Part shown: positions 1,691 through 49,632 of the stretch, one piece after another
Layout: every line of letters begins with the position of its first letter
Numbering within the stretch: the first letter of the stretch is position 1
NCBI RefSeq assembly: GCF_048593235.1
Contig: NC_133622.1
Span: 16,926,001-16,990,000, forward strand
Origin: Sminthopsis crassicaudata
Lineage: Eukaryota
Length of the DNA: 64,000 bases
Direction: 5' to 3'
Made by a program: the position numbers and the translations under genes
Notes under the pieces: generated by a model
What the model was told of the DNA's origin: nothing
The model's database searches: none
The model's input: the letters and a program-made list of their open reading frames with translations, nothing else

Positions 1691-2261
1691 ATGGCAACTC
1701 CACCTCTATCTCCATTGGAAAACTCCCACTGTGATGCTAAGAAGAGCACTGAAGATCCACTATATCTGGAAAAGACAAAGTTAGATAAAAGAAGCCCTAG
1801 CAGTGAGTACTGTTCTCTCATGACATTGCCATCTTCCACTCCTCCCCTGGGGAAATAGACCTTATTCCTGATGGTTTTTTACTTTCTTTGGCAGATAATG
1901 CCCATTCTCCTATAAGTAAGATAGAAGTTCTGTCATCTTTTTGTGAAATTGCATTGATGGAAGAGCCAGTGGTGGAAGAGCCAGTGGTGGAGCAAGACCT
2001 ACAGGATGTTCCTGACTTTAGGGACTCAGGGATGGAGTGGTCAGGTATCGCCAGCTCCCCTTCTGTTATTGTTCAGTTCTCTCTGCAATTTTCCTAACAG
2101 AGCCTAGAATGCTTTGCCATTTTCTGTAGATTAACAGCAGCTAAGGGCTGAACCTCCTAGACCTGGCTAGCATCATTGGGAACATTTACAAAAGCAAAAC
2201 CCCAGCCTGCCTTCCCCTGGCTAGCAAGAGATGGGACAAGATTCCAGAAAATGCCAGATCC

Positions 2262-2322
<61 letters not shown>

Positions 2323-5300
2323 ACCTGCACAAGAGCAAGCTTTACATATATGGACACAATAACTAAAGCAATTTGTATAGCTTTTAGCACAGGGGCTGGC
2401 ACAGAGTAAATGTTGAATAAAAGCTTATTCTCTTCCTCTTTGTTTTTGCAGAGAAAGACACCACAGGGAAAATAATTGCTGTCTTCAGAGAGTTCGGAAA
2501 AGGGATCCTCCTCCTGGGATTTCTCTACTTCTTTGTATGTTCCTTGGATGTTCTCGGCAGCGCTTTCCAACTGGTTGGAGGTATGAGACGCGATATCAGC
2601 ACAGATCAAAAGTTTGTGCGTGGCTTTTGTAGCTTAAGAGTTGCTTTTGGTTCAGCATGTAGCCAACCAACTGGCCAACTCAACCCAAGTAATGTCCCCT
2701 TTCTTAAACTCTTCCTGGCCAAGATGTCTCATCTTTTCATCCACTCCAGAGACATGGATGCTTCTCCATTCTTTCTGCCCTTCTCTCTTCCCTCTTCCCT
2801 ACTTACACTCTAATCTTTGGGGAAAAGACACTTTAGGGAATAGGAATCAAAAATTTGTGTGGAAGAATGTGATAGTTGGGCACCTTAGGTCATCAGATAA
2901 AAGTTGTGTTGAGGGTGACCCTCTGTATCTTTGCATTGATGTCTGAATCATAGCTTTGGATTCAGAGATTGGCATCTGTGTTAGATGCATATTTGGATGT
3001 TAGATGTTGTGTTGGCAACAGAAATGGTTTCAAGTGGAAAGAGTGAGAAGTCAAATTTGTCCCCGGAAAGCAACTAGAAAATTGGGGTCGTTTTGGTCCA
3101 AATCAGCCTCCCGGAGACCTTCCTTAACCCCCTCTCCACAGATTCTTCCCAGTCTCCCTCCCTTTGTGTCTGTCTCTCTCTTTCCTCTAATAACCCATAT
3201 CAGGAAAGGGAATAAGCATTTCTAGATCATTTATGTGTCAAGCCCCGCTCTAAGCAAATTCAGCCCTCACTGTCCTCTGCCACATTGCCTTCCTCAGCAG
3301 CCAGTGACTCTTCTTCACTCCTCCTTCCCCCACAGGGGCCTCTAAATTTGGTCTATGGCCCAGAAGTCCCTAATATAACCACATATAATTTAAAATTTTC
3401 CATTCTCTTTGCAGGGAAAATGGCTGGGAAGATTTTCCAAGATGGTTCAGTGTTGAACAACCCTGTGGCTGGCTTGATGATTGGCATGCTGTTGACAGTC
3501 CTGGTGCAGAGTTTCATCACCTCTACATCCATCGTTGTCAGCCTGGTATCCTCTTCACGTGAGTCAGCAGGGTCCCCTCTCCCCCAGTGCCCCAGTCCCT
3601 ATGCCAAACTGGATCTCTTGAAAGAACTTCATGCCAAATTTTAGAACTGTGAAATTGTTCCCTATGTGCCCCAGAGTCATCATCTCCCCGATTTTCCATC
3701 CTTCCAAGCTTGGGACAGAGCTCTTGCTACAGTCTCGATCCGAGCCATGCCCACATATCCCAACATTGCTGCCAGTGGTCTCGTTTTTTGCTATGGGTAA
3801 AGGTCCAGTTGCCCTGCCCCACTTAGAGCCGTGGGCACCTGGTTGCCGCTGTAGGGAGTTGTTCTTCACCCAGATCTTCAAGCAAAGACTGGGTGACTGA
3901 CTGGTTGGAGACATTGTAGAAAAGATTCCTCTTTCTTGGTCTTCATAGTTTCCCTAACTTTTTGCTAAGTTAATTCCTTGGCTTGTTGAAGCTTTTCCCT
4001 ACGAATTTCCCTAGTTTATTTTCATTTTCTTTTTTTCCTTTGACAGTGCTGACAGTAAAGGCAGCCATTCCCATCATCATAGGAGCCAGTATTGGGACTC
4101 CAGTGACCAAGACCATCGTGGCCCTCATGCAGGCTGGAGACAGAAATGGGTTCCGAGGGTATGAAGCTTTTTTTTTTTTTTTTTTAATCACTGCTGTAAC
4201 TGTATTTTATAAAGGTGAGAATCTTTACTCTGCTCTAGATACTCATCTTGCTCTTCCAGTGGTTCTTTCAGAGTGTGGAATAACTACTCAGAAGTTCACA
4301 TAATTCAGCTGAGTTTTCAATAACCTTGAATTGATAATGATTTCATTAAGATTAAGAAGAATAGTTAAAATCTGGCCTCAGACATTCTTTATGTCATATG
4401 ATTGTGATGGAATGCTATTGGGCCATAAGAAAGGATGGGGGGGGGTATAATTTCAGAGTGAAAAAAACCCATCCCATTAATTGCTTTGTTTTTTTCTCCC
4501 TGCTTTAGGGCTTTTGCTGGAGCGACTGTCCACGATTACTTTAACTGGTTGTTAGTGCTGGTGCTGCTGCCCGTGGAGGTGGTCACTGGCTACCTCTACC
4601 ACCTCACCGATCCCATCGTGGAAACCTTTAATATCAATAGCGAGGAAAATGTCCCTGACCTCCTGAAAGTCATCACCGATCCCTTCACCCAACTCATTAT
4701 CCGGGTGAGCATCAAGACTCCCTCTGATTTTAATATGAGAATGAAATGGTGCCAGTGGTGGACTAGGTTCCTGTGAAAGCAGAGCTCTAAGTCTCTTCCC
4801 CCAATCTGTAGTGCCGGTTAGACATGCCTTTCCTTGCTCTGACTCCCCCATTTTATTTGAGGGAGTGGAGCTAAGGGGCTTGCTTGACCCTCCACATTGG
4901 CAGTTGTGTTCTTCAGAACCTCCATTCTGCCATTTGGGGCCCAATCACTGTTTTGTTGGTTGCTTTGTTGCCTTTCTGAACCAGGCACTGGGAGATATGA
5001 TGACCAAATGCGAGCCCCTTCAAGGCTTCCAGGAGCTGGTGGTACTGGCCCCCCAGAATAGGGCAAAAGGGTCTATCTGGCCTGATGCGGGTCAGGTTAA
5101 GATGAGACAGTCCCATGTAGAAGTGAGGTCCTTGGGGAACGAGACCAATTTGTGTCCCTTTTATGTACATCAGGGTTTTGTCTTCTGTGCACTGGAGCCC
5201 CTGGGAGAGTAACTTTTCAGTCACAAATTATAGGTGAGGAACAAGCTAACTCTTTCCTCATGTGTGTTGCTTTTCCAGCTGGATAAAAAAGTCATAAATG

Positions 5301-8005
5301 AAATTGCTATGGGAAATGAGGCAGCCAAAAACAAGAGCCTGATAAAGACTTGGTGTAAAACAGTAAAATATGTGGTAAATATCAGCCCTATACCAAAGCT
5401 CTCCTCACCCTGCCTTAGTTCTACCTCAGACTCTGTGGAGCAGAATGCTTCTCTAAGACAGAGCTAAAGCAAGTGATGCTCAGGTCCCCATTCCAGGGTA
5501 ACAGTGCTCAGGCTGAGCACAGCTGGGCTGACCTTCAGAAGTAACCCAGAGTCTGGACTTTAGATGCTCCATGGTCTATGGACCAAGCACAGAGACAGAA
5601 GGCCTTTTCTAAGCATTATGGGAAAGGTGGAGTAGAGAAGACGGGGAAAGTGAGGATTCATTGGCTAGTACGCCATGTGCAATGAAATCGAATTTTCCAA
5701 AATGCCATTTTCAATAACAAGCTTTTTTTCCTTTATTGTGTCATTTAGGCATTAAGAAATGTTACTGTTCCCTCACCAGAAAACTGCACCTCTCCCAGCT
5801 TCTCCTGGACCAATGGGAACATGACCTGGACCGTCATGAACACAACATCTAAACAGAACATTGCAAAGTGTGAGTAGGAAATCGTTCAGTTAACCCTCAT
5901 GTCCTCACATTTTAAGTCTTTTTAGAAATCCAAAATGGCTTTTTATAAAATCTGTGTGGGACCAGGGTTAAATGTTATTTGTATTTAATTTCAATATCTC
6001 CTGAGATCTTTTGGGGGGAATTATATAAACCTGTGAATTACAACCACTTTCTGTAAGAGCTTGTGCTCTATAGAACGCTCTGTATCTGGGTTAAGTGATG
6101 AAGAAGAGAGAGATGATGACGGGTGGCTGCTCTGGTTCCCACAGGCAAACACGCATTTGTGGATGTCGGTCTCTCTGACCTGACCATTGGACTCATTCTC
6201 CTGGCCCTCTCCTTGCTGGTCCTGTGCACCTGTTTGATCCTGATGGTCAAGGTCCTGAACTCTATGCTCAAGGGACAAATTGCTTCGGTGATTAAGAAGA
6301 CCATCAATACAGGTAGAATTCCTCCCTTCCTGGGCCTTCCTCTGGTCCTCTACTTTTTCTGTCTCTAAGTTTGAAGATTCTATGTTCTGATAAAATGAAT
6401 TTGTAAATAAAGAAATCATCGCTAAGGTCATTGTAAATACAAAAGGGCTCTAGAAATGTCACTGTCCTCAGTAGTTGGCCAGGGAAGATAGTCCCATGCT
6501 GCTCCATCTCCCTCCTACCTTATACACAAACACAGAAGAAGAATGTCCAAGGAAAAGGAATCAAGCGGGCAGAGCATGGCTGTGGTGGCCCTCTCTGGCC
6601 ACCCAAAATAATCAGAGACATTCTCATTAAAATCCTAAAAATCATCAAAGTTATTAATAAAATTAAAGAGCAGTTATTAGGCAAGAAGGAATGGGCTGAC
6701 TGTAAGAGATAGCACAGAGGGCCTAGAGAAAGGAATATGAATTCAAATCCTACAAGTAAGTCACTTGACTTCTGTTTACCCCACTTTCCTCCTCTGTTAG
6801 GATGAGGATAAAATCTACCTTCCAGAGTTTTTTTTGTTAGGATGAAATAGCGATTTGTCAGGACACTTGGACAAACGGGGCCTTTTCTTCTTTCCCCCAG
6901 ATTTTCCTTTTCCTTTTGCCTGGCTGAAGGACTACCTCACCATTCTTGTAGGAGCTTGGAGTACATTTCTGGTGCAGAGCAGCTCTGTGTTCATGTCTAC
7001 CATCATTCTTCTGTTTGGTGAGTTCTCCCTTTTCCCCCCATTTCCCCTTGCCCATGTCCATGTCTCCATTTTTACATTGGTCTTGCCATGCTGAGTCATT
7101 CCCAGCCAGGACTGAACCTGTATTCCCTCTCCCCCCTTAGGCATCAGAGTGATCAGCCTGGAGAGAGCGTACCCCTGGACCCTGGGCTCCAACTTCGGCA
7201 CCACCACCACGACCCTCCTGACTACTCTGGCCAGCTCTGGAAGCACTTTGCCAGATTCCCTCCAGGTCAGAATGCACAGTTGGGACCTTCTGTTCTTTCC
7301 TCAACTTCCCACTCCATCCTTCCCATAAGCACCGGGGTTCCTTTTTTGAAAGATCCTCCATATCCCAAAGGGTCGCTGGTTGCTGCCGAGGTCTCAGCTG
7401 CCTCTGAACAGTGACTTGGGGGCTAGAGAACCATCCCTAGCTCTTGTTCTCACAAGCTGAATTTCCTAAGAAATGACCAGATATCTACAGCTTGTGTCTT
7501 AATAAACAAATGAGGATGGTGAAGTTTCACCCCCATCTGCAACTAGTCCCCTGTCCCCCACATAGATTGGTATGGATAACTTCCCCCTTTGCCCTCCTCT
7601 GAGTCAGAAAACGAGAAAAGGTGGAAACAATGTCTGACTTGTTTGAAGTTTGAGTATGAATCTCAGCTGTTACTTGCTAGGTGACTGGTATAGATCCAAG
7701 CTCTGTGTGCAGTGGGGGGGGGGGGGGGGACAAAGGTCCCGGGAATATGGCAAGTGAACGAGCATCTTTTTAGATTCCAGTGAAGCTGGCATGGTGATGA
7801 TGGCAGTACATACTTTTCTTCCCTCTGATTCCCTCCCACCTAATTCCAGCTAACTGCTCTCTCCCCAAATTTCCCATTTCCACAGAGTATGAAGGAAAGG
7901 GCCACCTGGACTGAGGAAGAACAAGCATTCCTCCAATCCCCTGTCACCTATTTGAGGACATATGGACCCTTATCCTGGTCTTCCACTGTATGTAACTCTA
8001 CCTGA
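1691..8005 (+). CDS. SLC34A2: SLC34A2-like gene alpha1: exons 2-12 intact (490 aa), native terminal exon absent, putative new terminal exon (529 aa total)
   Basis: Coding exons 1691-1802, 1895-2044, 2452-2580, 3415-3558, 4047-4158, 4509-4704, 5279-5374, 5749-5869, 6145-6312, 6901-7017, 7141-7265, all GT-AG and phase-compatible. Sizes 112/150/129/144/112/196/96/121/168/117/125 match recalled human SLC34A2 except exon 3. Motifs include [48 protein letters not shown] and GSNFGTTTT. The last exon 7886-8005 is inferred. Confidence 0.88.
2264..2315. repeat. (TG)26 microsatellite, intron 3 of alpha1
   Basis: Direct count. Confidence 0.95.
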
Positions 8006-8190
8006 ACAGATGTATAGTCAGCGAATTGTATAGTTTTTCTATTGGATAGTAAATAACGTGTATGAGTCAGATTTTATATTGCTCACCTTTGGAAGGAAAT
8101 ATTTAATTACAAAATATCTTTATCTAAATAGTCAATATAAGCAAGAACATCTGTATATATTGTCAATTTTGTCATGTTTACAATAATTTT

Positions 8191-8196
8191 ATTAAA
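8191..8196 (+). terminator. Candidate polyadenylation signal ATTAAA in the inherited 3'UTR
   Basis: Also present in beta1 (19839) and the copy-2 equivalents, followed by U/GU-rich sequence. Other candidates are AATAAA at 7501 (intron 12), 8348 and 19634. Confidence 0.35.
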
Positions 8197-9508
8197 AAAA
8201 TTTCAACAATCACTACCATTCATTCTTTTTGCTTAGTAGAATGTGTCATATAGGAAAAGTCCTCAGCCAACTCCTTTTTACTTCATTTCTTTCTTTTTTG
8301 TTTACATGTATAATTCCACATATATTTCCATATTTGTAACATTGTGCAATAAAAATCAGATCAATTCAATCCACATTCAGTGTCCATGGTTTTTTCTCTA
8401 GGTATGGATAACATTTACTTATTCCTTTTTTAGGTGTACTTTTAAGGTGTAAGGTGTAAGTCATAAGTTTTTCTAGAAAAATTTAAGATTATGAGGAAAC
8501 ACCTGTGCTGTACGATAGAGTAAAATGTGTTCTTTTTCATATCATCTTTATTGGTAGAATTATGTAACATATATTCTAAATCTACATTTCAAGCTTCTGA
8601 ATTACAAAAACAATAGGTTATGAAAAGTTATTACACGAAGTGAAACTGCAGAAAACTTTAAAATTAAATCTGAAAAACACAACATATCTGATGGTCAAGA
8701 GGAGATAAATCACAACTTTGCATACACATTATTAAAACATTAAAGAAAATAAGATGACTCAACACTGCACCATGTATATATTCTTAAACAATTGATATAT
8801 ATGATAAATGAAACCTATATGGAACCTTTTATAGGACAGACCACTAATGAAATAGTATTGTAAACAACTTTACTAATAACGTTTGATGTAAACTCCCAAT
8901 GGAATTGTGGGGTGAACAGTATAAAACACCCGTTTTATTACTGTGACTTTTTCAGTTCTGTCCCAACTCTCCATGACTCTATTTGGGATTTTCTTGGCAG
9001 AGATATTGGGGTGGTTTGCCATTTCCTTCTCCCGTTCATTTTTTGTACTATCTTTTAAACTTGTTCATAAGCATAGTATAAATACAGAAGCTAAGTACCT
9101 CTTTCATCTCCTTTACACTTTGTGTGTCTTTTTCCATTTGGATTATTCATGTGATCTGTGTACATGGTGTGCTTTGATATATTTTTGGAAAGACATTGTC
9201 TAAGAAGACTGGATCACAGAAGTTGCTTGATTATTTTTTTCCTTTAGAGTTCCATGCTCAGAGATCCCCAAAGGACTGTAATTTTTGACCAAAGTTATCT
9301 TAATTTGGTATTTATGTAGTTTTAAAGGTGCACAGACATTGACATTTAGAAGAAATAAGAAGTTGTCTTCCTCTGTATAAAAAATAATGTCATGTGATCA
9401 AGAAAGAGGCGAGTAAGACACTTTTAAGTCCAATAAAGAGTTGAAGTGAGAGAATTGTCAAGCTCGTCTCAGGAGGCGACTCCTACATTATTAAAGGGGA
9501 GAAGAACT

Positions 9509-10160: not shown

Positions 10161-10822
10161 TTCCTAGATCTTGTCCAGTCCTCTGATGTTATAAATGAAG
10201 AAACTGAGCACCACAGATGAAAAAACTGCATGAGGTCCCATGGTATATAGCAGAGCTAAAGTCAGAATTCTGTTCTTCTGCCTTCTAGCCAGTGTCTTTC
10301 TCCAACAATATCCTACATGGAATTGTGATTCTTTTTTGTTTGTTTTGGGTATTTTGGGGAAAATAGGGAGTGAGTCACTTGAACTTGGTTTCCTCAGCAT
10401 GGCCCCTGTCCTATGTTTCAGACACCTATTTGGTTTTCTCTTTTGTCTCTCCCTGTTTTCCTCCAGAATTCTAGGAATTGAGATAATATTTGAACTCATG
10501 TCCTCTTCACTATACTTTGTTTATCTTGCTTCCCCTTAAATTAGCCATTCTACATCTTTTTGTGTTTTATGGACCTTTTGGGCTATCTATAGATCCTTTC
10601 TCCAAATGATATATGTAAATAGATAAAACAAAACACATAGGATTACAAAAGAAATCAGTTACACTGAAATGCCATGATCCAATTATTTATTTTATTTAAA
10701 AAATTCAGAGACCCAGAGCAAGAACTGCTGGAGAAAAATTAGTGGTGAAATGCGAGGCTATTTTCAATGAAGAAATAGAAAAGCTTGCTTTTTTAAAAAG
10801 TCAAAATTCATAGTAGAATTTC

Positions 10823-12879
10823 TTTTTTTTTACATTAAATTTTTTAAAATTAATTTTTAAAATTATATCATTTTCTTTGACAGTACATATGCATAAGTAA
10901 TTTTATTTTTTACAACATTATCCCTTGTACTCCCTTGTATTCTGAATTTTCCTCTCCTTACCTCCACCTCCTCCCCTAGATGGCAGGCATTCCCATACAT
11001 ATTAAATATGTTATAGTATATCCTAAGTACAATATATATGTGCAGAACCGAATTTTGTTTTTGTTGTTGTTGCAAAGGAAGAATTGTATTTGGAAGGTAA
11101 AAATAATCTAGGAAGAAAAACAAAAAAAAAAATGCTCACAGTTTACACTCATTTCCCAGTGTTCCTTCTCTAGGTGTAGCTGATTCTGTCCATCATTGAT
11201 CAATTAGAATTGCATTAGCTCTTCTCTATGTTGAGATATCCACTTCCATCAGAATACCTCCTCATACAGTATCATTGTTGAAGTGTATAATGATCCCCTA
11301 GTTCTGCTCTTTTCACTCAACATCAGTTGGTATAAGTCTCTCCAAGCCTCTCTGTATTCCTCCTGATGGTCATTTCTTACAGAACAATAATATTCCATAA
11401 CATTCATATACCATAATTTACCCAACCATTCTCCAATTGATGGACATCCATTCATTTTCCAGTTTCTAGCCACTATGAAAAGGACTGCCACAAACATTTT
11501 GGCAAAGACAGGTCCCTTTCCCTTCTTTAGTTAATTTCCTTGGGATATAAGCACAGAAGAAACACTGCTGGCTCAAGGGGTATGCACATTTTGATAACTT
11601 TTGGGGCATAATTCTAGATTGCTCTCCAGAATGGCTGGCTTTTTTCAGAACTCCACTAACAATGCATCAGTGTCCCAGTTTTCTCACAGCCCCTCCAACA
11701 TCATCGTTATTTGTTCCTGTCATCTTAGCCAATCTGACAGTTGTGTAATGATAACTCAGAGTTGTCTTAATTTGCATTTCTCTGATCAGTAGTGATTTGG
11801 AACCCTCTTTCATATGAGTGGAAATAGTTTCAATTTCATCCTCTGAAAATTGTCTGTTCATATCCTTTGACCATTTGTCAATTGGAGAATGGCTTGATTT
11901 CTTATAATTAAAGTCAATTCTCTGTATATTTTGGAGATGAGGCCTTTATCAGAACCTTTAACTATAAACATGTTTTCCCAATTTATTTTTTCCCTTCTAA
12001 TCTTGTTTGCATTAGTTTTGTTTGTGCAGAAACTTTTTAATTTGGTTTAACCAAAATTTTCTATTTTGTGATCAATAATGGTCTCTAGTTCTCCCTTGGA
12101 CACAAACTCCTTCCTCCTCCACAAGTCTGAGAGGTAAACCATCCCATGTTCCTCCAATTTAATTAAGATTTCGTTCTTTATGCCTAAATCTTGGACCCAT
12201 TTTGATCTAATCTTAGTATGTGGTGTTAAATGTAGATCCATGCCTAGATTCTGCCATACTAATTTCCAGTTTTCCCAGCCATTTTTGTCAAATAATGAAT
12301 TCTTATCCCAAAAGTTGGGATCTTTGGGTTTGTCAAACACTAGATTGCTGTTTTTATTCACTAAGTGAGTTTTTTCCTTCTATGGAATTTTTTCCCATTT
12401 TATCCATTTTATTTTTTAGAGAGCTGTTTTCTTCATCCAGCTCACTAATCCTGTTTTCCTTAGAGTTGTTAACTTTTCCAATTCACTAATTTTGTTTCTG
12501 AATGATTTGATCTCTTTATCCACTCTGGATAACTTCTCCAGGCTCTCTTGCCAAGCTTCCCTTTCCTTTTCCCATTTCTCTTCCAGCTCTCTTGTGAGAG
12601 CCTTTTTGATTTCCTCTATGAGATTCTTTTGTATTGAGGAGCAGATCATATCCCCTTAAGGGATTCCTCTGGGGACAGTCTGTTTTTAGTCTCCTCAGTA
12701 TTTGAAGTCTACTCTCTCTCCATACAGAAGCTGTCAATGCTTAAAGCCCTTTTGAATTTTTTGTTCATTTTGTCAGAGGGGAATCGAAGAAAACAAATTG
12801 ACAAGACAAACAATTGATCTGTTTTTGGGGGATGGGGCTGGATGGTGTTAAAGGGCTTCTTCTACAGACTGGGGGGGGA
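10823..12879 (-). mobile_element. L1 LINE, internally deleted (end of 5'UTR and ORF1 start joined to ORF2 3' end and 3'UTR), alpha-specific
   Basis: Poly(T) at 10823. ORF2 C-terminal peptides (LVFDKPKD..FWDKNSLFDK..WENW; NGCPSIGEWLGKLWY). ORF1-like coiled coil LEEKWEKE at 12416-12649. TSD AGAATTTC at 10815-10822 and 12880-12887. Absent from the beta and gamma equivalents. Confidence 0.9.
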
Positions 12880-16059: not shown

Positions 16060-16373
16060 TCCAGAGGGCCCCAATCAGCCAGCCTTCCCACCCAATCCTT
16101 CTCAAATCGAGAAGCGGTCCTCCCGGTGGATGAAGCCAGAGCAGAAGACGAAGCTCCTTTGGCGTCTCCTTCCCTTCTTCTGAAGGAACGTTCCTGGGCC
16201 TCCGGGGAAACTCGCACCGAAGTCTCCACAACTCTCAGTGGGCTGAATCGGGCTCCTGGCTCCTCTGGCCGGGCTAAGGATTGGAAAGTGAAGGGACCCT
16301 GCTTGAGTCTCAGCGCACGTTGCGGCCGCTTTCAGCACCGTGGACAGAGATCCCCCTCTGACCACAGGTAAGC
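16060..16373 (+). promoter_or_regulatory. Putative promoter and non-coding exon 1 of beta1
   Basis: CCAAT at 16071 and 16092, locally CpG-rich (GCGGCCGC 16322-16329), donor CAG|GTAAGC at 16367/16368. No TATA box. Confidence 0.55.
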
Positions 16374-34835: not shown

Positions 34836-35543
34836 ATGGCAACTCCACCTCTATCTCCATTGGAAAACTCCCACTGTGATGCTAAGAAGAGCACTGAAGA
34901 TCCACTATATCTGGAAAAGACAAAGTTAGATAAAAGAAGCCCTAGCAGTGAGTACTGTTCTCTCATGACATTGCTATCTTCCTCTCCTCCCCTGGGGAAA
35001 TGGACCTTATTCCTGATGGTTTTTTACTTTCTTTGGCAGATAATGCCTATTCTCCTATAAGTAAGATAGAAGTTCTGTCATCTTTTTGTGAAATTGCATT
35101 GATGGAAGAGCCAGTGATGGAAGAGCCAGTGGTGGAGCAAGACCTACAGGATGTTCCTGACTTTAGGGACTCAGGGATGGAGTGGTCAGGTAACGCCAGC
35201 TCCCCTTCTGTTATTGTTCAGTTCTCTCTGCAATTTTCCTGACAGAGCCTAGAATGCTTTGCCATTTTCTGTAGTGACCATGTGTATAGATAAGGAAATG
35301 AGGTAAGGAAGAAGTGACTTGCCCAAGGTCATACAACGAGTAAGCCTCTGAGATCCACTTTGAACTCGGGAAGATGAGGCATTGTTGGCCTCAGAGAAGA
35401 GCTGGGGCTGGATTAACAGCAGCTAAGGGCTGAGCCTCCTAGAGCTGGCTAGCATCATTGGGAACATTTACAAAAGCAAAACCCCAGCCAGCCTTCTCCT
35501 GGCTAGAAAGAGATAGGACAAGATTCCAGAAAATGCCAGATCC

Positions 35544-35606
<63 letters not shown>

Positions 35607-38600
35607 ACCTGCACAAGAGCAAGCTTTACATATATGGACACAATAACTAAAGCAATTTGTATAGCTCTTAGCACAGGGGCTGGCACAGAGTAGGTGTTGA
35701 ATAAAAGCTTATTCTCTTCCTCTTTGTTTTTGCAGAGAGAGACACCACAGGGAAAATAATTGCTGTCTTCAGAGAGTTTGGAAAAGGGATCCTCCTCCTG
35801 GGATTTCTCTACTTCTTTGTATGTTCCTTGGATGTTCTCGGCAGCGCTTTCCTACTGGTTGGAGGTATGAGAAGCGATATCAGCACAGATCAAAAGTTTC
35901 TGCGTGGCTTTTGTAGCTTAAGAGTTGCTTTTGGTTCAGCATGTAGCCAACCAACTAGCCAACTCAACCCAAGTAATGTCCCCTTTCTTAAACTCTTCCT
36001 GGCCAAGATGTCTCATCTTTTCATCCACTCCAGAGACGTAGATGCTTCTCCATTCTTTCTGCCCTTCTCTCTTCCCTCTTCCCTACTTACACTCTAGTCT
36101 TTGGGGAAAAGACACTTTGGGGAATAGGAATCAAAAATTTGTGTGGAAGGATGTGATAGTTGGGCACCTTAGGTCATCAGATAAAAGTTGCGTTGAGGGT
36201 GACCCTCTGTATCTTTGCATTGATGTCTGAATCATAGCTTTGGGTTCAGAGATTGGCATCTGTGTTAGATGCATCTTTGGATGTTAGATGTTGTGTTGGC
36301 AACAGAAATGGTTTCAAGTGGAAAGAGTGAGAAGTCAAATTTGTCCCCGGAAAGCAACTAGAAAATTGGGGTCGTTTTTGTCCAAATCAGCCTCCCGGAG
36401 ACCTTCCTTAACCCCCTCTCCACAGATTCTTCCCAATCTCCCTCCCTCTGTCTCTGTCTCTCTCTTTCCTCTAATAACCCATATCAGGAAAGGGAATAAG
36501 CATTTCTAGATCATTTATGTGGCAATCCCCGCTCTAAGCAAATTCAGCCCTCACTGTCCTCTGCCACATTGCCTTCCTCAGCAGCCAGTGACTCTTCTTC
36601 ACTCCTCCTTCCCCCACAGGGGCCTCTAACTTTGGTCTATGGCCCAGAAGTCCCTAATATAACCACGTATAATTTAAAATTTTCCATTCTCTTTGCAGGG
36701 AAAATGGCTGGGAAGATTTTCCAAGATGGTTCAGTGTTGAACAACCCTGTGGCTGGCTTGATGATTGGCGTGCTGGTGACAGTCCTGGTGCAGAGTTTCC
36801 TCACCTCTATATCCATTGTTGTCAGCCTGGTATCCTCTTCACGTGAGTCAGCACGTTCCCCTCTCCCCCAGTGCCCCAGTCCCTATGCCAAACTGGATCT
36901 CTTGAAAGAACTTCATGCGAAATTTTAGAACTGTGAAATTGTTCCCTATGTGCCCCAGAGTCATCATCTCCCCGATTTTCCATCCTTCCAAGCTTGCTAC
37001 AGTCTCGATCCGAGCCATGCCCACATATCCCAACATTGCTGCCAGTGGTCTCGTTTTTTGCTATGGGTAAAGGTCCAGTTGCCCTGCCCCACTTAGAGCC
37101 GTGGGCACCTGGTTGCCGCTGTAGGGAGTTGTTCTTCACCCAGATCTTCAAGCAAAGACTGGGTGACTGACTGGTTGGAGACATTGTAGAAAAGATTCCT
37201 CTTTCTTGGTCTTCATAGTTTCCCTAACTTTTTGCTAAGTTAATTCCTTGGCTTGTTGAAGCTTTTCCCTACGAATTTCCCTATTTTCTTTTCATTTTCT
37301 TTTTTTCCTTTGACAGTGCTGACAGTAAAGGCAGCCATTCCCCTCATCATAGGAGCCAGTATTGGGACTCCAGTGACCAAGACCATCGTGGCCCTCATGC
37401 AGGCTAGAGACAGAAATGGGTTCCACAGGTAGGTAGCTTTGTTTTTTTTTTTTTTAATCACTGCTGTAACTGTATTTTATAAAGGTGAGAATCTTTACTC
37501 TGCTCTAGATACTCATCTTGCTCTTCCAGTGGTTCTTTCAGAGTGTGGAATAACTACTCAGAAGTTCACATAATTCAGCTGCGATTTCAATAACCTTGAA
37601 TTGATAATGATTTCATTAAGATTAAGAAGAATAGTTAAAATCTGGCCTCAGACATTCTTTATGGCATATGATTGTGATGGAATGCTATTGTGCCATAAGA
37701 AAGGATGGGGGGGGTATAATTTCAGAGTGAAAAAAACCCATCACATTAATTGCTTTGTTTTTTTCTCTCTGCTTTAGGGCTTTTGCTGGAGCGACTGTCC
37801 ACGATTACTTTAACTGGTTGTTAGTGCTGGTGCTGCTGCCCGTGGAGGTGGTCACTGGCTACCTCTACCACCTCACCGATCCCATCGTGGAAACCTTTAA
37901 TATCAATAGCGAGGAAAATGTCCCTGACCTCCTGAAAGTCATCACCGATCCCTTCACCCAACTCATTATCCGGGTGAGCATCAAGACTCCCTCTGACTTT
38001 AATATGAGTATGAAATGGTGCCAGTGGTGGACTAGGTTCCTGTGAAAGCAGAGCTCTAAGTCTCTTCCCCCAATCTGTAGTGCCGGTTAGACATGCCTTT
38101 CCTTGCTCTGACTCCCCCATTTTATTTGAGGGAGTGGAGCTAAAGGGCTTGCTTGGCCCTCCACATTGGCAGTTGTGTTCTTCAGCACCCCCATTCTGCC
38201 ATTTGGGGCCCAATCACTGTTTTGTTGGTTGCTTTGTTGCCTTTCTGAACCAGGCACTGGGAGATATGATGACCAAATGCGAGCCCCTTCAAGGCTTCAA
38301 GGAGCTGGTGGTACTGGCCCCCCAGAATAGGGCAAAAGGGTCTATCTGGCCTGATGGGGGTCAGGTTAAGATGAGACAGTCCCATGTAGAAGTGAGGTCC
38401 TTGGGGAACGAGACCAATCTGTGTCCCTTTTATATACATCAGGGTTTTGTCTTCTGTGCACTGGAGCCCCTGGGAGAGTAACTTTTCAGTCACAAATTAT
38501 AGGTGAGGAACAAGCTAACTCTTTCCTCATGTGTGTTGCTTTTCCAGCTGGATAAAAAAGTCATAAATGAAATTGCTATGGGAAATGAGGCAGCCAAAAA

Positions 38601-41270
38601 CAAGAGCCTGATAAAGACTTGGTGTAAAAGAGCAAAATATGTGGTAAATATCAGCTCTATACCAAAGCTCTCCTCACCCTGCCTTAGTTCTACCTCAGAC
38701 TCTGTGGAGCAGAATGCTTCTCTAAGACAGAGCTAAAGCAAGTGATGCTCAGGTCCCCATTCCAGGGTAACAGTGCTCAGGCTGAGTGCAGCCCAGCTGA
38801 CCTTCAGAAGTAACCCAGAGTCTGGACTTTAGATGCTCCATGGTCTATGGACCAAGCACAGAGACCGAAGGACTTTTCTAAGCATTATGGGGAAGGTGGA
38901 GTAGAGAAGACTGGGAAAGTGAGGATTCATTGGCTAGTAGGCCATGTGCAATGAAATCGATTTTTCCAAAATAACTATTTTCAATAACAAGCTTTTTTTC
39001 CTTTATTGTGTCATCTAGGCATTAAGAAATGTTACTGTTCCCTCACCAGAAAACTGTAACTCTCCCAGCTTCTCCTGGACCAATGGGAACACGACCTGCA
39101 CCGTCATGAACACAACATCTAAACAGAACATTGCAAAGTGTGAGTAGGAAATCTTTCAGTTAAACCTCATGTCCTCACATTTTAAGTCTTTTTAGAAATC
39201 CAAAATGGCTTTTTATAAAATCTGTGTGGGACCAGGGCTAAATGTTATTTGTATTTAATTTCAATATCTCCTGAGATCTTTTGGGGAGGACTGTGTAAAT
39301 CGCTGAATTACAACCACTTTTTGTAAGAGCTAGTGCTGGGTAGAACACTGTTTCTGGGTTAAGTGATGAAGAGGAAGAGAGAGATGATGACGGGTGGCTG
39401 CTCCGGTTCCCACAGGCAAACACACATTTGTGGATGTCGGTCTCTCTGACCTGACCATTGGACTCATTCTCCTGGCCCTCTCCTTGCTGGTCCTGTGCAC
39501 CTGTTTGATCCTGATTGTCAAAGTCCTGAACTCTATGCTCAAGGGACAAATTGCTACGGTGATTAAGAAGACCATCAATACAGGTAGAATTCCTCCCTTC
39601 CTGGGCCTTCCTCTGGTCCTCTACTTTTTCTGTCTCTAAGTTTGAAAATTCTATGTTCTGAGAAAATGAATTTGTAAATAAAGAAATCATCGCTAAGGTC
39701 ATTGTAAATACAAAAGGGCTCTAGAAATGTCACTGTCCTCAGTAGTTGGCCAGGGATCATTGTCCCAAGCTGCTCCATCTCCCTCCTACCTTATACACAA
39801 ACACAGAAGAAGAATGTCCAAGGAAAAGGAATCAAGCGGGCAGAGCATGGCTGTGGTGGCCCTCTCTGGCCACCCAAAATAATCAGATATTCTCATTAAA
39901 ATCCTAAAAATCATCACAGTTATTAATAAAATTAAAGAACAGTTATTAGGCAAGAAGGAGTGGGCTGACTGTAAGAGATAGCACAGAGGGCTTAGAGAAA
40001 GGAATATGAATTCAAATCCTCCAAGTAAGTCACTTGTCTTCTGTTTACCCCACTTTCCTCCTCTGTTAGCATGAGGATAAAATCTACCTCCCAGAGTTTT
40101 TTTTGTTAGGATGAAATAGCGATTTGTCAGGACACTTGGACAAACGGGGCCTTTTCTTCTTTCCCCCAGATTTTCCTTTTCCTTTTGCCTGGCTGAAGGA
40201 CTACCTCACCATTCTTGTAGGAGCTTGGAGTACATTTCTGGTGCAGAGCAGCTCTGTGTTCATGTCTGCCATCATTCTTCTGTTTGGTGAGTTCTCCCTT
40301 TTCCTCCCATTTCCTCTTGCCCATGTCCATGTCTCCATTTTTACATTGGTCTTGCCATGCTGAGTCATTCCCAGCCAGGACTGAACCTGTATTCCCTCTC
40401 CCCCCTTAGGCATCAGAGTGATCAGCCTGGAGAGAGCGTACCCCCGGACCCTGGGCTCCAACTTCGGCACCACCACCATGACCATCCTGACTACTCTGGC
40501 CAGCTCTGGAAGCACTTTGCCAGATTCCCTCCAGGTCAGAATGCACAGTTGGGACCTTCTGTTCTTTCCTCAACTTCCCACTCCATCCTTCCCATAAGCA
40601 CCGGGGTTCCTTTTTTGAAAGATCCTCCATATCCCAAAGGGTCGCTGGTTGCTGCAGAGGTCTCAGCTGCCTCTGAACAGTGACTTGGGGGCTAGAGAAC
40701 CATCCCTAGCTCTTGTTCTCACAAGCTGAATTTCCTAAGAAATGACCATATATCTACAGCTTGTGTCTTAATAAACAAATCAGGATGGTGAAGTTTCACC
40801 CCCATCTGCAACTAGTCCCCTGTCCCCCACATAGATTGGTATGGATAACTTCCCCTCTTTGCCCTCCTTTGAGTCAGAAAACGAGAAAAGGTGGAAACAA
40901 TGTCTGACTTGTTTGAAGTTTGAGTATGAATCTCAGCTGTTACTTGCTAGGTGACTGGTATAGATCCAAGCTCTGTGTGCAGTGGGGGGGGGGGACAAAG
41001 GTCCCGGGAATATGGCATGTGAACGAGCATCTTTTTAGATTCCAGTGAAGCTGGCATGGTGATGATGGCAGTACATACTTTTCTTCCCTCTGATTCCCTC
41101 CCACCTAATTCCAGCTAACTGCTCTCTCCCCAAATTTCCCATTTCCACAGAGTATGAAGGAAAGGGCCACCTGGACTGAGGAAGAACAAGCATTCCTCCA
41201 ATCCCCTGTCACCTATTTGAGGACATATGGACCCTTATCCTGGTCTTCCACTGTATGTAACTCTACCTGA
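34836..41270 (+). CDS. SLC34A2: SLC34A2-like gene alpha2: exons 2-12 intact, putative new terminal exon
   Basis: Exons 34836-34947, 35040-35189, 35736-35864, 36699-36842, 37317-37428, 37778-37973, 38548-38643, 39019-39139, 39416-39583, 40170-40286, 40410-40534, putative 41151-41270. Open frame and GT-AG throughout. Confidence 0.88.
35546..35599. repeat. (TG)27 microsatellite, intron 3 of alpha2
   Basis: Direct count. Confidence 0.95.
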
Positions 41271-49319: not shown

Positions 49320-49632
49320 CCAGAGGGCCCCAATCAGCCAGCCTTCCCACCCAATCCTTCTCAAATCGAGAAGCGGTCCTCCCGGTGGATGAAGCCAGAG
49401 CAGAAGACGAAGCTCCTTTGGCGTCTCCTTCCCTTCTTCTGAAGGAACGTTCCTGGGCCTCCGGGGAAACTCGCACCGAAGTCTCCACAACTCTCAGTGG
49501 GCTGAATCGGGCTCCTGGCTCCTCTGGCCGGGCTAAGGATTGGAAAGAGAAGGGACCCTGCTTGAGTCTCAGCGCACGTTGCGGCCGCTTTCAGCACCGT
49601 GGACAGAGATCCCCCTCTGACCACAGGTAAGC
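49320..49632 (+). promoter_or_regulatory. Putative promoter and non-coding exon 1 of beta2
   Basis: CCAAT at 49330 and 49351, donor at 49626/49627. Copy of 16060-16373. Confidence 0.55.

What the first reader, a model, noticed from the sequence alone, without database searches (positions are those of the whole stretch)
7141..8005. Alpha gene lost its last exon and appears to have recruited a new one from the old 3'UTR
Seen: after exon 12 no IALCHFFFN-type exon exists. Homology to the beta stop and 3'UTR region resumes at TACATACT (about 7807 versus 19446). Inside that former UTR alpha has CTAAC (7850-7854), a pyrimidine tract and TTCCACAG| (7885), whereas beta has CTCAC and the weaker TTCCAAAG. 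Splicing from the phase-0 exon 12 donor gives [39 protein letters not shown]-stop (7886-8005), identical in alpha2. An alternative is read-through of intron 12 ([20 protein letters not shown]-stop 7326-7328, AATAAA 7501). Inference: exonisation gives an NMD-resistant 529-aa product lacking the last membrane segments and tail.
Basis: partly seen in the sequence, partly recalled or inferred. Interest (0 to 1): 0.8.

Follow-up and report, generated by a model that had tools for sequence, protein, structure and literature searches.

The report
Truncated transporter gene, makeshift last exon
In the fat-tailed dunnart, several copies of a phosphate-transporter gene in a tandem array lost their last exon to one 1.9-kb deletion, and the public annotation already ends them with a stretch of the old 3'UTR, but nobody has shown that this ending is used and the product cannot be a normal transporter.

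Summary
The window is Sminthopsis crassicaudata CM109186.1, about 16.926-16.990 Mb, inside a tandem array of SLC34A2-like (NaPi-IIb-like) genes.

The missing exon 13 is a real 1,949-bp deletion with its junction at 7806|7807. Two intact paralogues still hold the segment. Four copies share the junction: alpha1, alpha2 and two copies outside the window.

The proposed splice (7265>7886 and 40534>41151) and the 529-aa product are already RefSeq models. XP_074130590.1 maps 100% to alpha2 and XP_074130252.1 to alpha1.

Several points weaken the recruitment story:
- CTAAC is ancestral. Only the -3 change at 7883 (AAG to CAG) is new.
- An equally good ancestral acceptor at 7850 feeds the same frame.
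- The 39-codon frame is also open in the true 3'UTR of an intact paralogue.
- All six differences in that frame among copies change the amino acid.
- The other two deleted copies are modelled with different 3' ends.

The runs I laid were DNA, so usage is untested. The protein lacks TM6 and later parts and carries S160F, S161I/L, N189S, S193P and N196K, so it is not a Na/Pi transporter. This is a new member of a known kind, of modest interest.

The parts
1691..7265 (+). alpha1 coding exons 1-11 of the SLC34A2-like gene: 1691-1802, 1895-2044, 2452-2580, 3415-3558, 4047-4158, 4509-4704, 5279-5374, 5749-5869, 6145-6312, 6901-7017, 7141-7265. The frame is open and all splice sites are canonical.
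   Evidence: Homology mapping from the exactly reconstructed alpha2 model.
7141..7265 (+). It encodes the stretch from [23 protein letters not shown] to LPDSLQ and ends in phase 0. It differs from alpha2 at 7176, 7210 and 7215, all nonsynonymous.
7266..7806 (+). Retained 5' part of intron 12, collinear with intron 12 of intact paralogues L001 and L007. It holds the ancestral donor GTCAGA, the read-through frame of 20 codons with stop at 7326-7328, AATAAA at 7501-7506 and a G run at 7714-7729.
7351..7352 (+). The AAG acceptor homologous to the one RefSeq uses in deleted copy L005 (XP_074130251.1; 88-nt intron). It is a rival 3' end.
7806..7807 (+). Deletion junction (GGCAG|TACATACT). A 1,949-bp segment is missing that L007 holds at 10334-12282: the end of intron 12 and the exon-13 coding sequence up to about 5 codons before the stop.
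7807..7849 (+). Remnant of the last codons, the old stop region (the ancestral TGA was lost through a 3-base gap and substitutions) and the start of the old 3'UTR. It ends in the ancestral acceptor TTCCAG (AG at 7848-7849), with CTGAT at 7825-7829 as a possible branch site.
7850..7854 (+). CTAAC branch-site-like motif, 32 nt upstream of the AG at 7884-7885. It is ancestral: present in L001, L007 and Antechinus, and changed to CTCAC in beta.
7883..7885 (+). Acceptor CAG. The C at 7883 (-3) is derived (A in beta, L001, L007 and Antechinus) and is shared by all four copies that carry the deletion.
7886..8005 (+). Proposed new terminal coding exon: 39 codons plus TGA at 8003-8005. It is the terminal CDS exon of RefSeq model XP_074130252.1.
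8006..8370 (+). The rest of the old 3'UTR, with ATTAAA at 8191 and AATAAA at 8348. It is 94.5-94.7% identical to the 3'UTR of the intact paralogues.
34836..41270 (+). alpha2, the CDS range of XP_074130590.1 (529 aa). It has 12 CDS exons; the last two are 40410-40534 and 41151-41270.
16186..16371 (+). Homologue (99.3% identical) of the terminal exon that RefSeq joins to exon 12 in deleted copy L006 (XP_074130230.1). A second copy lies at 49445-49630 (99.7%). This is a rival 3' end lying between alpha and beta.

Best explanation
Shown: the window lies in a tandem array of SLC34A2-like genes in the fat-tailed dunnart. A single 1,949-bp deletion removed the 3' end of intron 12 and almost all of the coding part of the last exon. 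That exon encodes TM6 with the Na+ ligands His491 and Asn495, two further membrane helices and the Cys-rich tail. The deleted form now sits in at least four array copies, spread by unit duplication, unequal crossing-over or gene conversion.

Inferred: the natural acceptor is gone, so the phase-0 donor of exon 12 must either run on into the intron remnant or pair with a makeshift acceptor. The retained former 3'UTR offers two acceptors 36 nt apart, both feeding the same frame, which was already open. One is TTCCAG|7850, which is ancestral. The other is CACAG|7886, which has an ancestral CTAAC branch site 32 nt upstream and one derived -3 A-to-C change.

I think this junction is used in some alpha transcripts (about 0.5), but as one of several makeshift ends rather than a selected new exon.

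The product cannot be a Na/Pi cotransporter. It lacks TM6 and everything after it. The whole alpha subfamily, including a full-length member, has replaced Pi/Na ligands of repeat 1: S160F, S161I/L, N189S, S193P, N196K.
For: - Deletion: alpha is collinear at 92-97% with paralogues L001 and L007 except for a 1,949-bp segment that holds exon 13. That segment matches the window only in the beta tails.
- The same junction occurs in alpha1, alpha2, L005 and L006.
- Junction and product: P0305 (XP_074130590.1, 529 aa) and P0303 (XP_074130252.1) translate exactly from exon sets that include 40534>41151 and 7265>7886.
- Polarity of the splice signals comes from intact dunnart paralogues and Antechinus.
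- A second in-frame acceptor lies at 7850.
- The frame is open in the L007 UTR, and all six differences among the deleted copies are nonsynonymous.
- Heterogeneous RefSeq 3' ends are seen in L005 and L006.
- Ligand residues were mapped on human numbering against the cryo-EM paper bioRxiv 10.64898/2026.05.25.727688.
- The Pfam Na_Pi_cotrans domain is kept.
Against: - No transcript evidence was obtained. Runs X1-X4 cover introns and exons alike, so they are DNA, and they show no 7265>7886 joint.
- Other runs of the same species hold next to none of the sampled words.
- Run X5's shares (0.12 and 0.25) could come from the 95%-identical UTR of an intact paralogue.
- Gnomon may have placed the last exon ab initio.
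- Against 'mere decay': all six dunnart copies keep open frames and canonical splice sites. Exons show 1 in-frame indel against 52 in introns, where 7-15 were expected (P about 0.006 down to 4e-6). They show 0 stops where 3.2 were expected (P 0.04).
Confidence: 0.55

Rival explanations
1. Read-through or intronic polyadenylation is the main 3' end. Transcripts run past the exon-12 donor, add 20 codons (VRMHSWDL... with the stop at 7326-7328) and are cleaved after AATAAA at 7501.
For: - The donor GTCAGA has C at +3, which is suboptimal.
- With the natural acceptor deleted, intron definition is weakened (inference).
- The read-through frame and its stop are conserved in all dunnart copies and in Antechinus.
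- A RefSeq model of a sugar-glider paralogue (P0284, 512 aa) ends in just such a read-through, VRMHSYDS....
Against: - The same donor serves the intact paralogues, so it works.
- RefSeq did not model this end for any dunnart copy.
- No reads were available to test it.
Confidence: 0.2
2. Exon 12 is mostly joined to other makeshift acceptors. Candidates are the AAG at 7351-7352 (as modelled in copy L005), TTCCAG|7850, or the exon at 16186-16371 between alpha and beta (as modelled in copy L006).
For: - RefSeq models XP_074130251.1 and XP_074130230.1 use the first and third of these ends, in copies that also carry CACAG and the open frame.
- The downstream exon is 99.3-99.7% identical in the window. 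An 8.9-kb intron is an unlikely ab initio choice, which hints at read support (inference).
- The acceptor at 7850 has a better pyrimidine tract (0.82 against 0.71) and C at -3.
Against: - For the two window copies RefSeq chose 7886.
- In alpha1 the 7352 acceptor is AAG behind a shorter T run than in L005.
Confidence: 0.2
3. alpha1 and alpha2 are silent or barely transcribed duplicated pseudogenes, and the RefSeq proteins are artefacts of homology-driven prediction.
For: - dN/dS between alpha1 and alpha2 is 1.72 (24.5 nonsynonymous against 4.5 synonymous changes), and most array pairs lie near 1.
- An essential part of the fold is lost and ligand residues are replaced.
- The exact 529-aa and 405-aa proteins occur only on the genome record, not in any assembled public run.
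- Runs with the same species label hold 0.00-0.01 of the sampled words.
Against: - Frames and splice sites are intact in every copy, with a significant deficit of indels and stops in exons.
- The upstream region is 96.8% identical to that of the intact paralogue L001.
- The absence of words in assembled contigs is weak evidence.
Confidence: 0.25

Closest known systems
[quoted passage not shown]
   Same: They are the window's own alpha2 and alpha1. They map at 100% identity, use the same 40534>41151 and 7265>7886 junctions and carry the same 39-residue tail.
   Different: They are automated predictions without a stated origin. The records seen here do not say that the tail is former 3'UTR or that exon 13 was deleted. 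The alpha1 model starts at a mini-exon at 3024, although the full 529-aa frame is intact.
Intact array paralogues XP_074129211.1 (P0307, 713 aa, locus L007) and the P0203 gene (locus L001)
   Same: They have the same exon structure, are 92-97% identical in DNA and use the same exon-12 donor. P0307 shares the rewritten repeat-1 residues.
   Different: They keep the 1,949-bp segment with exon 13 (TM6, later helices, Cys-rich tail). In them the 7886-type sequence lies after a real stop and has AAG, not CAG.
SLC34A2 / NaPi-IIb (human NP_006415.2; zebrafish Slc34a2a structures 9z60-9z66)
   Same: The proteins share the Pfam Na_Pi_cotrans domain, the inverted-repeat layout, the second QSSS motif and the TTTT motif.
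   Different: Alpha differs at S160F, S161I/L, N189S, S193P, N196K and T437M. Everything from His491 and Asn495 (TM6) onward is absent. The structure paper lists these positions as Pi/Na+ ligands.
Truncated isoform models of marsupial SLC34A2-like genes, for example Petaurus breviceps P0284 (512 aa)
   Same: These proteins also end right after exon 12 with a short unrelated tail.
   Different: The Petaurus tail is intron-12 read-through, not a spliced piece of 3'UTR. I did not check whether that gene still has exon 13.

Membership tests
SLC34 / NaPi-II Na+-phosphate cotransporters | Na_Pi_cotrans domain (Pfam PF02690) above the curated cut-off | tested here: met
   P0305 scores 75.7 bits against a cut-off of 29.1, in two stretches.
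SLC34 / NaPi-II Na+-phosphate cotransporters | Both QSSS signature motifs (human 158-161 and 431-434), which coordinate Pi | tested here: not met
   Motif 1 reads QSFI in alpha1 and QSFL in alpha2. Motif 2 is intact.
SLC34 / NaPi-II Na+-phosphate cotransporters | Na+ ligands of repeat 1 (Asn189, Ser193, Asn196) | tested here: not met
   Alpha has N189S, S193P and N196K.
SLC34 / NaPi-II Na+-phosphate cotransporters | TM6 of repeat 2 with His491 and Asn495, and the following helices | tested here: not met
   These parts are encoded by the deleted exon 13 and occur nowhere in the window for alpha.
SLC34 / NaPi-II Na+-phosphate cotransporters | Na+-dependent Pi uptake | not testable with these tools
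   This needs expression in oocytes or cells with a 32P uptake assay.
New terminal exon recruited from a former 3'UTR (exonisation) | The sequence is untranslated 3'UTR in the ancestral or intact gene | tested here: met
   In L001, L007 and Antechinus it lies just after the stop codon.
New terminal exon recruited from a former 3'UTR (exonisation) | A usable acceptor (AG, pyrimidine tract, branch site, no intervening AG) in a frame that gives a stop in the last exon | tested here: met
   CACAG|7886 has a pyrimidine fraction of 0.71, C at -3, the previous AG 36 nt upstream and CTAAC at -33. It was not scored with MaxEntScan or SpliceAI.
New terminal exon recruited from a former 3'UTR (exonisation) | Transcripts that carry the junction | tested here: inconclusive
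   The runs laid were DNA. Only automated gene models carry the junction.
New terminal exon recruited from a former 3'UTR (exonisation) | Coding constraint on the new exon | tested here: inconclusive
   Among four copies there are 6 nonsynonymous and 0 synonymous differences, too few to decide. The frame is also open in the L007 UTR.
Duplicated (unprocessed) pseudogene | A disabling lesion | tested here: met
   The last exon is lost through a 1,949-bp deletion.
Duplicated (unprocessed) pseudogene | Frameshifts, stops or broken splice sites accumulate at the neutral rate | tested here: not met
   There are none in 1,470 coding bases of any of six copies. The indel deficit has P of 0.006 or less, and the stop deficit has P of 0.04.
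Duplicated (unprocessed) pseudogene | dN/dS near 1 | tested here: met
   alpha1 against alpha2 gives 1.72. Array pairs range from 0.4 to 1.8. L001 against Antechinus gives 0.31.

The most novel reading that the evidence does not exclude
The alpha-type genes may be a young, dasyurid-specific family of transporter-derived membrane proteins. On this reading they are kept open by selection while changing fast, with the Pi/Na site dismantled. The truncated form with a C-terminus made from old 3'UTR would be expressed and would do something new, for example modulate or trap full-length NaPi-IIb-like partners in secretory epithelia such as uterus or mammary gland, rather than transport phosphate.
Probability: 0.12. 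Interest if true: 0.65.

Novelty: new member of a known kind. Interest (0 to 1): 0.35.

Why it matters
If the junction is used, this is a dated, clean case of a protein C-terminus born from 3'UTR right after a deletion. The intact and deleted forms sit side by side in one array, which makes the steps easy to order: a frame and acceptor that already existed, the deletion, and a -3 change whose timing relative to the deletion I did not resolve.

It also bears on why dasyurid marsupials expanded SLC34A2-like genes (PMC12866920). A related gene is among the most abundant pregnancy transcripts in the opossum uterus (PMC5012577).

As it stands, the main practical value is a caution. Several RefSeq 'NaPi-IIb-like' proteins of this species are truncated, lack ligand residues and have mutually inconsistent 3' ends.

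Tried and rejected
- Read laying on X1-X4: the contigs cover introns as well as exons, so these are DNA runs. They give no splice information. Their loose ends at 7806 and 7825 are the undeleted paralogues.
- Second run search on 7886-8380: run X5 holds 0.25 of the sampled words, and organism B's run X6 holds 0.17. A 95%-identical paralogue UTR would give about the same share, so I do not count this as expression.
- Assembly gap as the cause: rejected. The window has no N and the same junction occurs in four copies.
- Exon 13 hidden elsewhere in the window: rejected.
- 'Alpha gained CTAAC': rejected. The motif is ancestral.
- 'TAG-to-TAT opened the frame for the new exon': rejected. The change is shared with the intact copy L007.
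- Monophyly of the deleted copies: not found. The gene-body tree is mosaic and L007 groups with alpha2. I therefore could not separate changes made after the deletion.
- AlphaFold2 model of P0307: mean pLDDT 53.6, too poor to use. I used the published cryo-EM description instead.
- MaxEntScan and SpliceAI: not available. I used only simple measures.

Full report
**What the window is.** A self-comparison shows a 33-kb unit present twice (126-30740 and 33264-64000, 98.5% identical). Each unit holds a long gene, 'alpha', and a short one, 'beta'. Translations identify both as SLC34A2 (NaPi-IIb) relatives.

[quoted passage not shown] The 90% clusters around two dunnart entries then gave two RefSeq proteins. 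Both translate exactly from the window:
- P0305 = XP_074130590.1 (529 aa), from alpha2.
- P0303 = XP_074130252.1 (405 aa), from alpha1 (exon sets rebuilt exactly).

Their record positions place the window at Sminthopsis crassicaudata CM109186.1, about 16,926,001-16,990,000. Other members of the same array lie 20-160 kb upstream of the window: L001, L005, L006 and L007.

**The observation.**
- Exon 12 is 7141-7265, in phase 0.
- No exon-13 motif occurs in any frame.
- Alpha/beta homology resumes at TACATACT (7807).
- CTAAC is at 7850-7854 and the acceptor CACAG ends at 7885. Beta has CTCAC and CAAAG at these places.
- A 39-codon frame runs to TGA at 8003-8005 and is identical in alpha2.
- The read-through stop is at 7326-7328 and AATAAA is at 7501.
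- The window has no N.

**Why exon 13 is missing.** Alpha is collinear with two intact paralogues at 92-97% identity, except for one segment. In L007 that segment is 10334-12282, 1,949 bp long. It holds the end of intron 12, the natural acceptor and the exon-13 coding sequence up to about five codons before the stop. The junction in alpha1 is GGCAG(7806)|TACATACT(7807).

The same junction occurs in alpha1, alpha2, L005 and L006. This points to one deletion that spread through the array. The deleted segment matches the window only in the tails of the two beta genes.

The gene-body tree is mosaic: intact L007 groups with alpha2. The copies therefore exchange sequence, and 'before' and 'after' the deletion cannot be cleanly separated.

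- The sequence is 3'UTR in the intact copies and in Antechinus.
- The C at -3 (7883) is derived and limited to copies with the deletion.
- RefSeq models for both window copies use exactly 7265>7886 and 40534>41151, and give the 529-aa protein.

Several things argue against a selected recruitment:
- CTAAC is ancestral, and beta lost it.
- A second ancestral acceptor, TTCCAG|7850, lies 36 nt upstream in the same frame. It has a better pyrimidine tract.
- The frame is open in L007, where it is true UTR, and the TAG-to-TAT change is shared with L007.
- The six differences in the 120 bases among the four deleted copies all change the amino acid.
- L005 and L006 carry the same CACAG and an open frame, yet RefSeq models them differently. 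L005 uses an acceptor 88 nt into intron 12. L006 uses an exon 8.9 kb downstream, whose homologues lie in the window at 16186-16371 and 49445-49630.

**Transcripts.** I could not settle this. The four best-holding runs cover introns and exons evenly and show no joint at 7265>7886, so they are DNA. Small runs of the same species hold next to none of the sampled words. Run X5's shares (0.12 of 6900-8300 and 0.25 of 7886-8380) are what a 95%-identical paralogue UTR would give. The exact 529-aa and 405-aa proteins are on record only from the genome itself.

**What the product could do.** The published zebrafish Slc34a2a structures name the Pi and Na+ ligands (PDB entries). On human numbering, alpha-type proteins carry S160F, S161I/L, N189S, S193P, N196K and T437M. 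The truncation removes His491, Asn495 and everything after them. The full-length P0307 shares the repeat-1 changes, so those are older than the deletion or were spread by gene conversion. A Na/Pi transporter function is therefore very unlikely. This is an inference and was not assayed.

**Dead or alive?** The signals are mixed.
- dN/dS between alpha1 and alpha2 is 1.72, and most array pairs lie near 1. L001 against Antechinus gives 0.31.
- Yet all six dunnart copies keep open frames and canonical splice sites over 1,470 coding bases.
- Exons show one in-frame indel against 52 indels in introns. Expected were 15, or 7 after removing low-complexity contexts (P from 4e-6 to 0.006). They show no stop where 3.2 were expected (P 0.04).
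- Among the four deleted copies alone, 1 indel was seen where 9 were expected.
- Gene conversion from intact copies could contribute to this pattern.

**Context from papers.** An SLC34A2 orthogroup expanded in the dasyurid ancestor (PMC12866920). An SLC34A2-like gene is among the most abundant pregnancy-associated uterine transcripts in the opossum (PMC5012577).

**Verdict.** The adaptive reading rests on a single derived base at -3. I rate this a new member of a known kind: a truncated array copy with a makeshift last exon. Its interest is modest until reads show which 3' end is used.

Noticed in passing
window 16186-16371 and 49445-49630: These stretches are 99.3-99.7% identical to the terminal exon of RefSeq model XP_074130230.1 (copy L006). 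That model joins the exon to exon 12 across 8.9 kb. The exon lies between alpha and beta, just upstream of the beta promoter-like region. It bears on the scan's separate note that alpha and beta might be spliced together.
   Followed up: partly
window 7848-7850: An ancestral acceptor TTCCAG|7850 lies 36 nt upstream of 7886 in the same frame. Using it would add 12 residues ([12 protein letters not shown]) to the same tail.
   Followed up: partly
window 3024-3042: The RefSeq model for alpha1 starts at a 19-base mini-exon (MVSSGK...) in intron 3, although alpha1's full 529-aa frame from 1691 is intact with canonical splice sites.
   Followed up: partly
window 1691-7265 versus 34836-40534, and loci L005-L007: The gene-body tree and the distances by segment are mosaic. 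Intact L007 groups with alpha2, and L006 is 0.5% from alpha1 in the first 1.3 kb but 4.3% in the last. This points to gene conversion or unequal crossing-over in the array.
   Followed up: partly
all alpha-type copies (alpha1, alpha2, L005, L006, L007): Exons have far fewer indels and stops than introns predict, while dN/dS is near or above 1. The frames look protected even though residues change freely.
   Followed up: yes
window 7714-7729: A G homopolymer has 16 G in alpha1 and 11 in alpha2. Public contigs break or skip here (a joint 7712>7725, and loose ends at 7725 and 7726).
   Followed up: no
window 7886-8380: A run of another organism (X6, organism B) holds about 8 sampled words, and almost all of them lie in this 3' stretch rather than in 6900-7885. 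I cannot say whether this is a conserved UTR in a relative or RNA.
   Followed up: no
locus L006 9561-9566: Copy L006 has an improved exon-12 donor (GTAAGA instead of GTCAGA) and an earlier read-through stop (12 codons).
   Followed up: no
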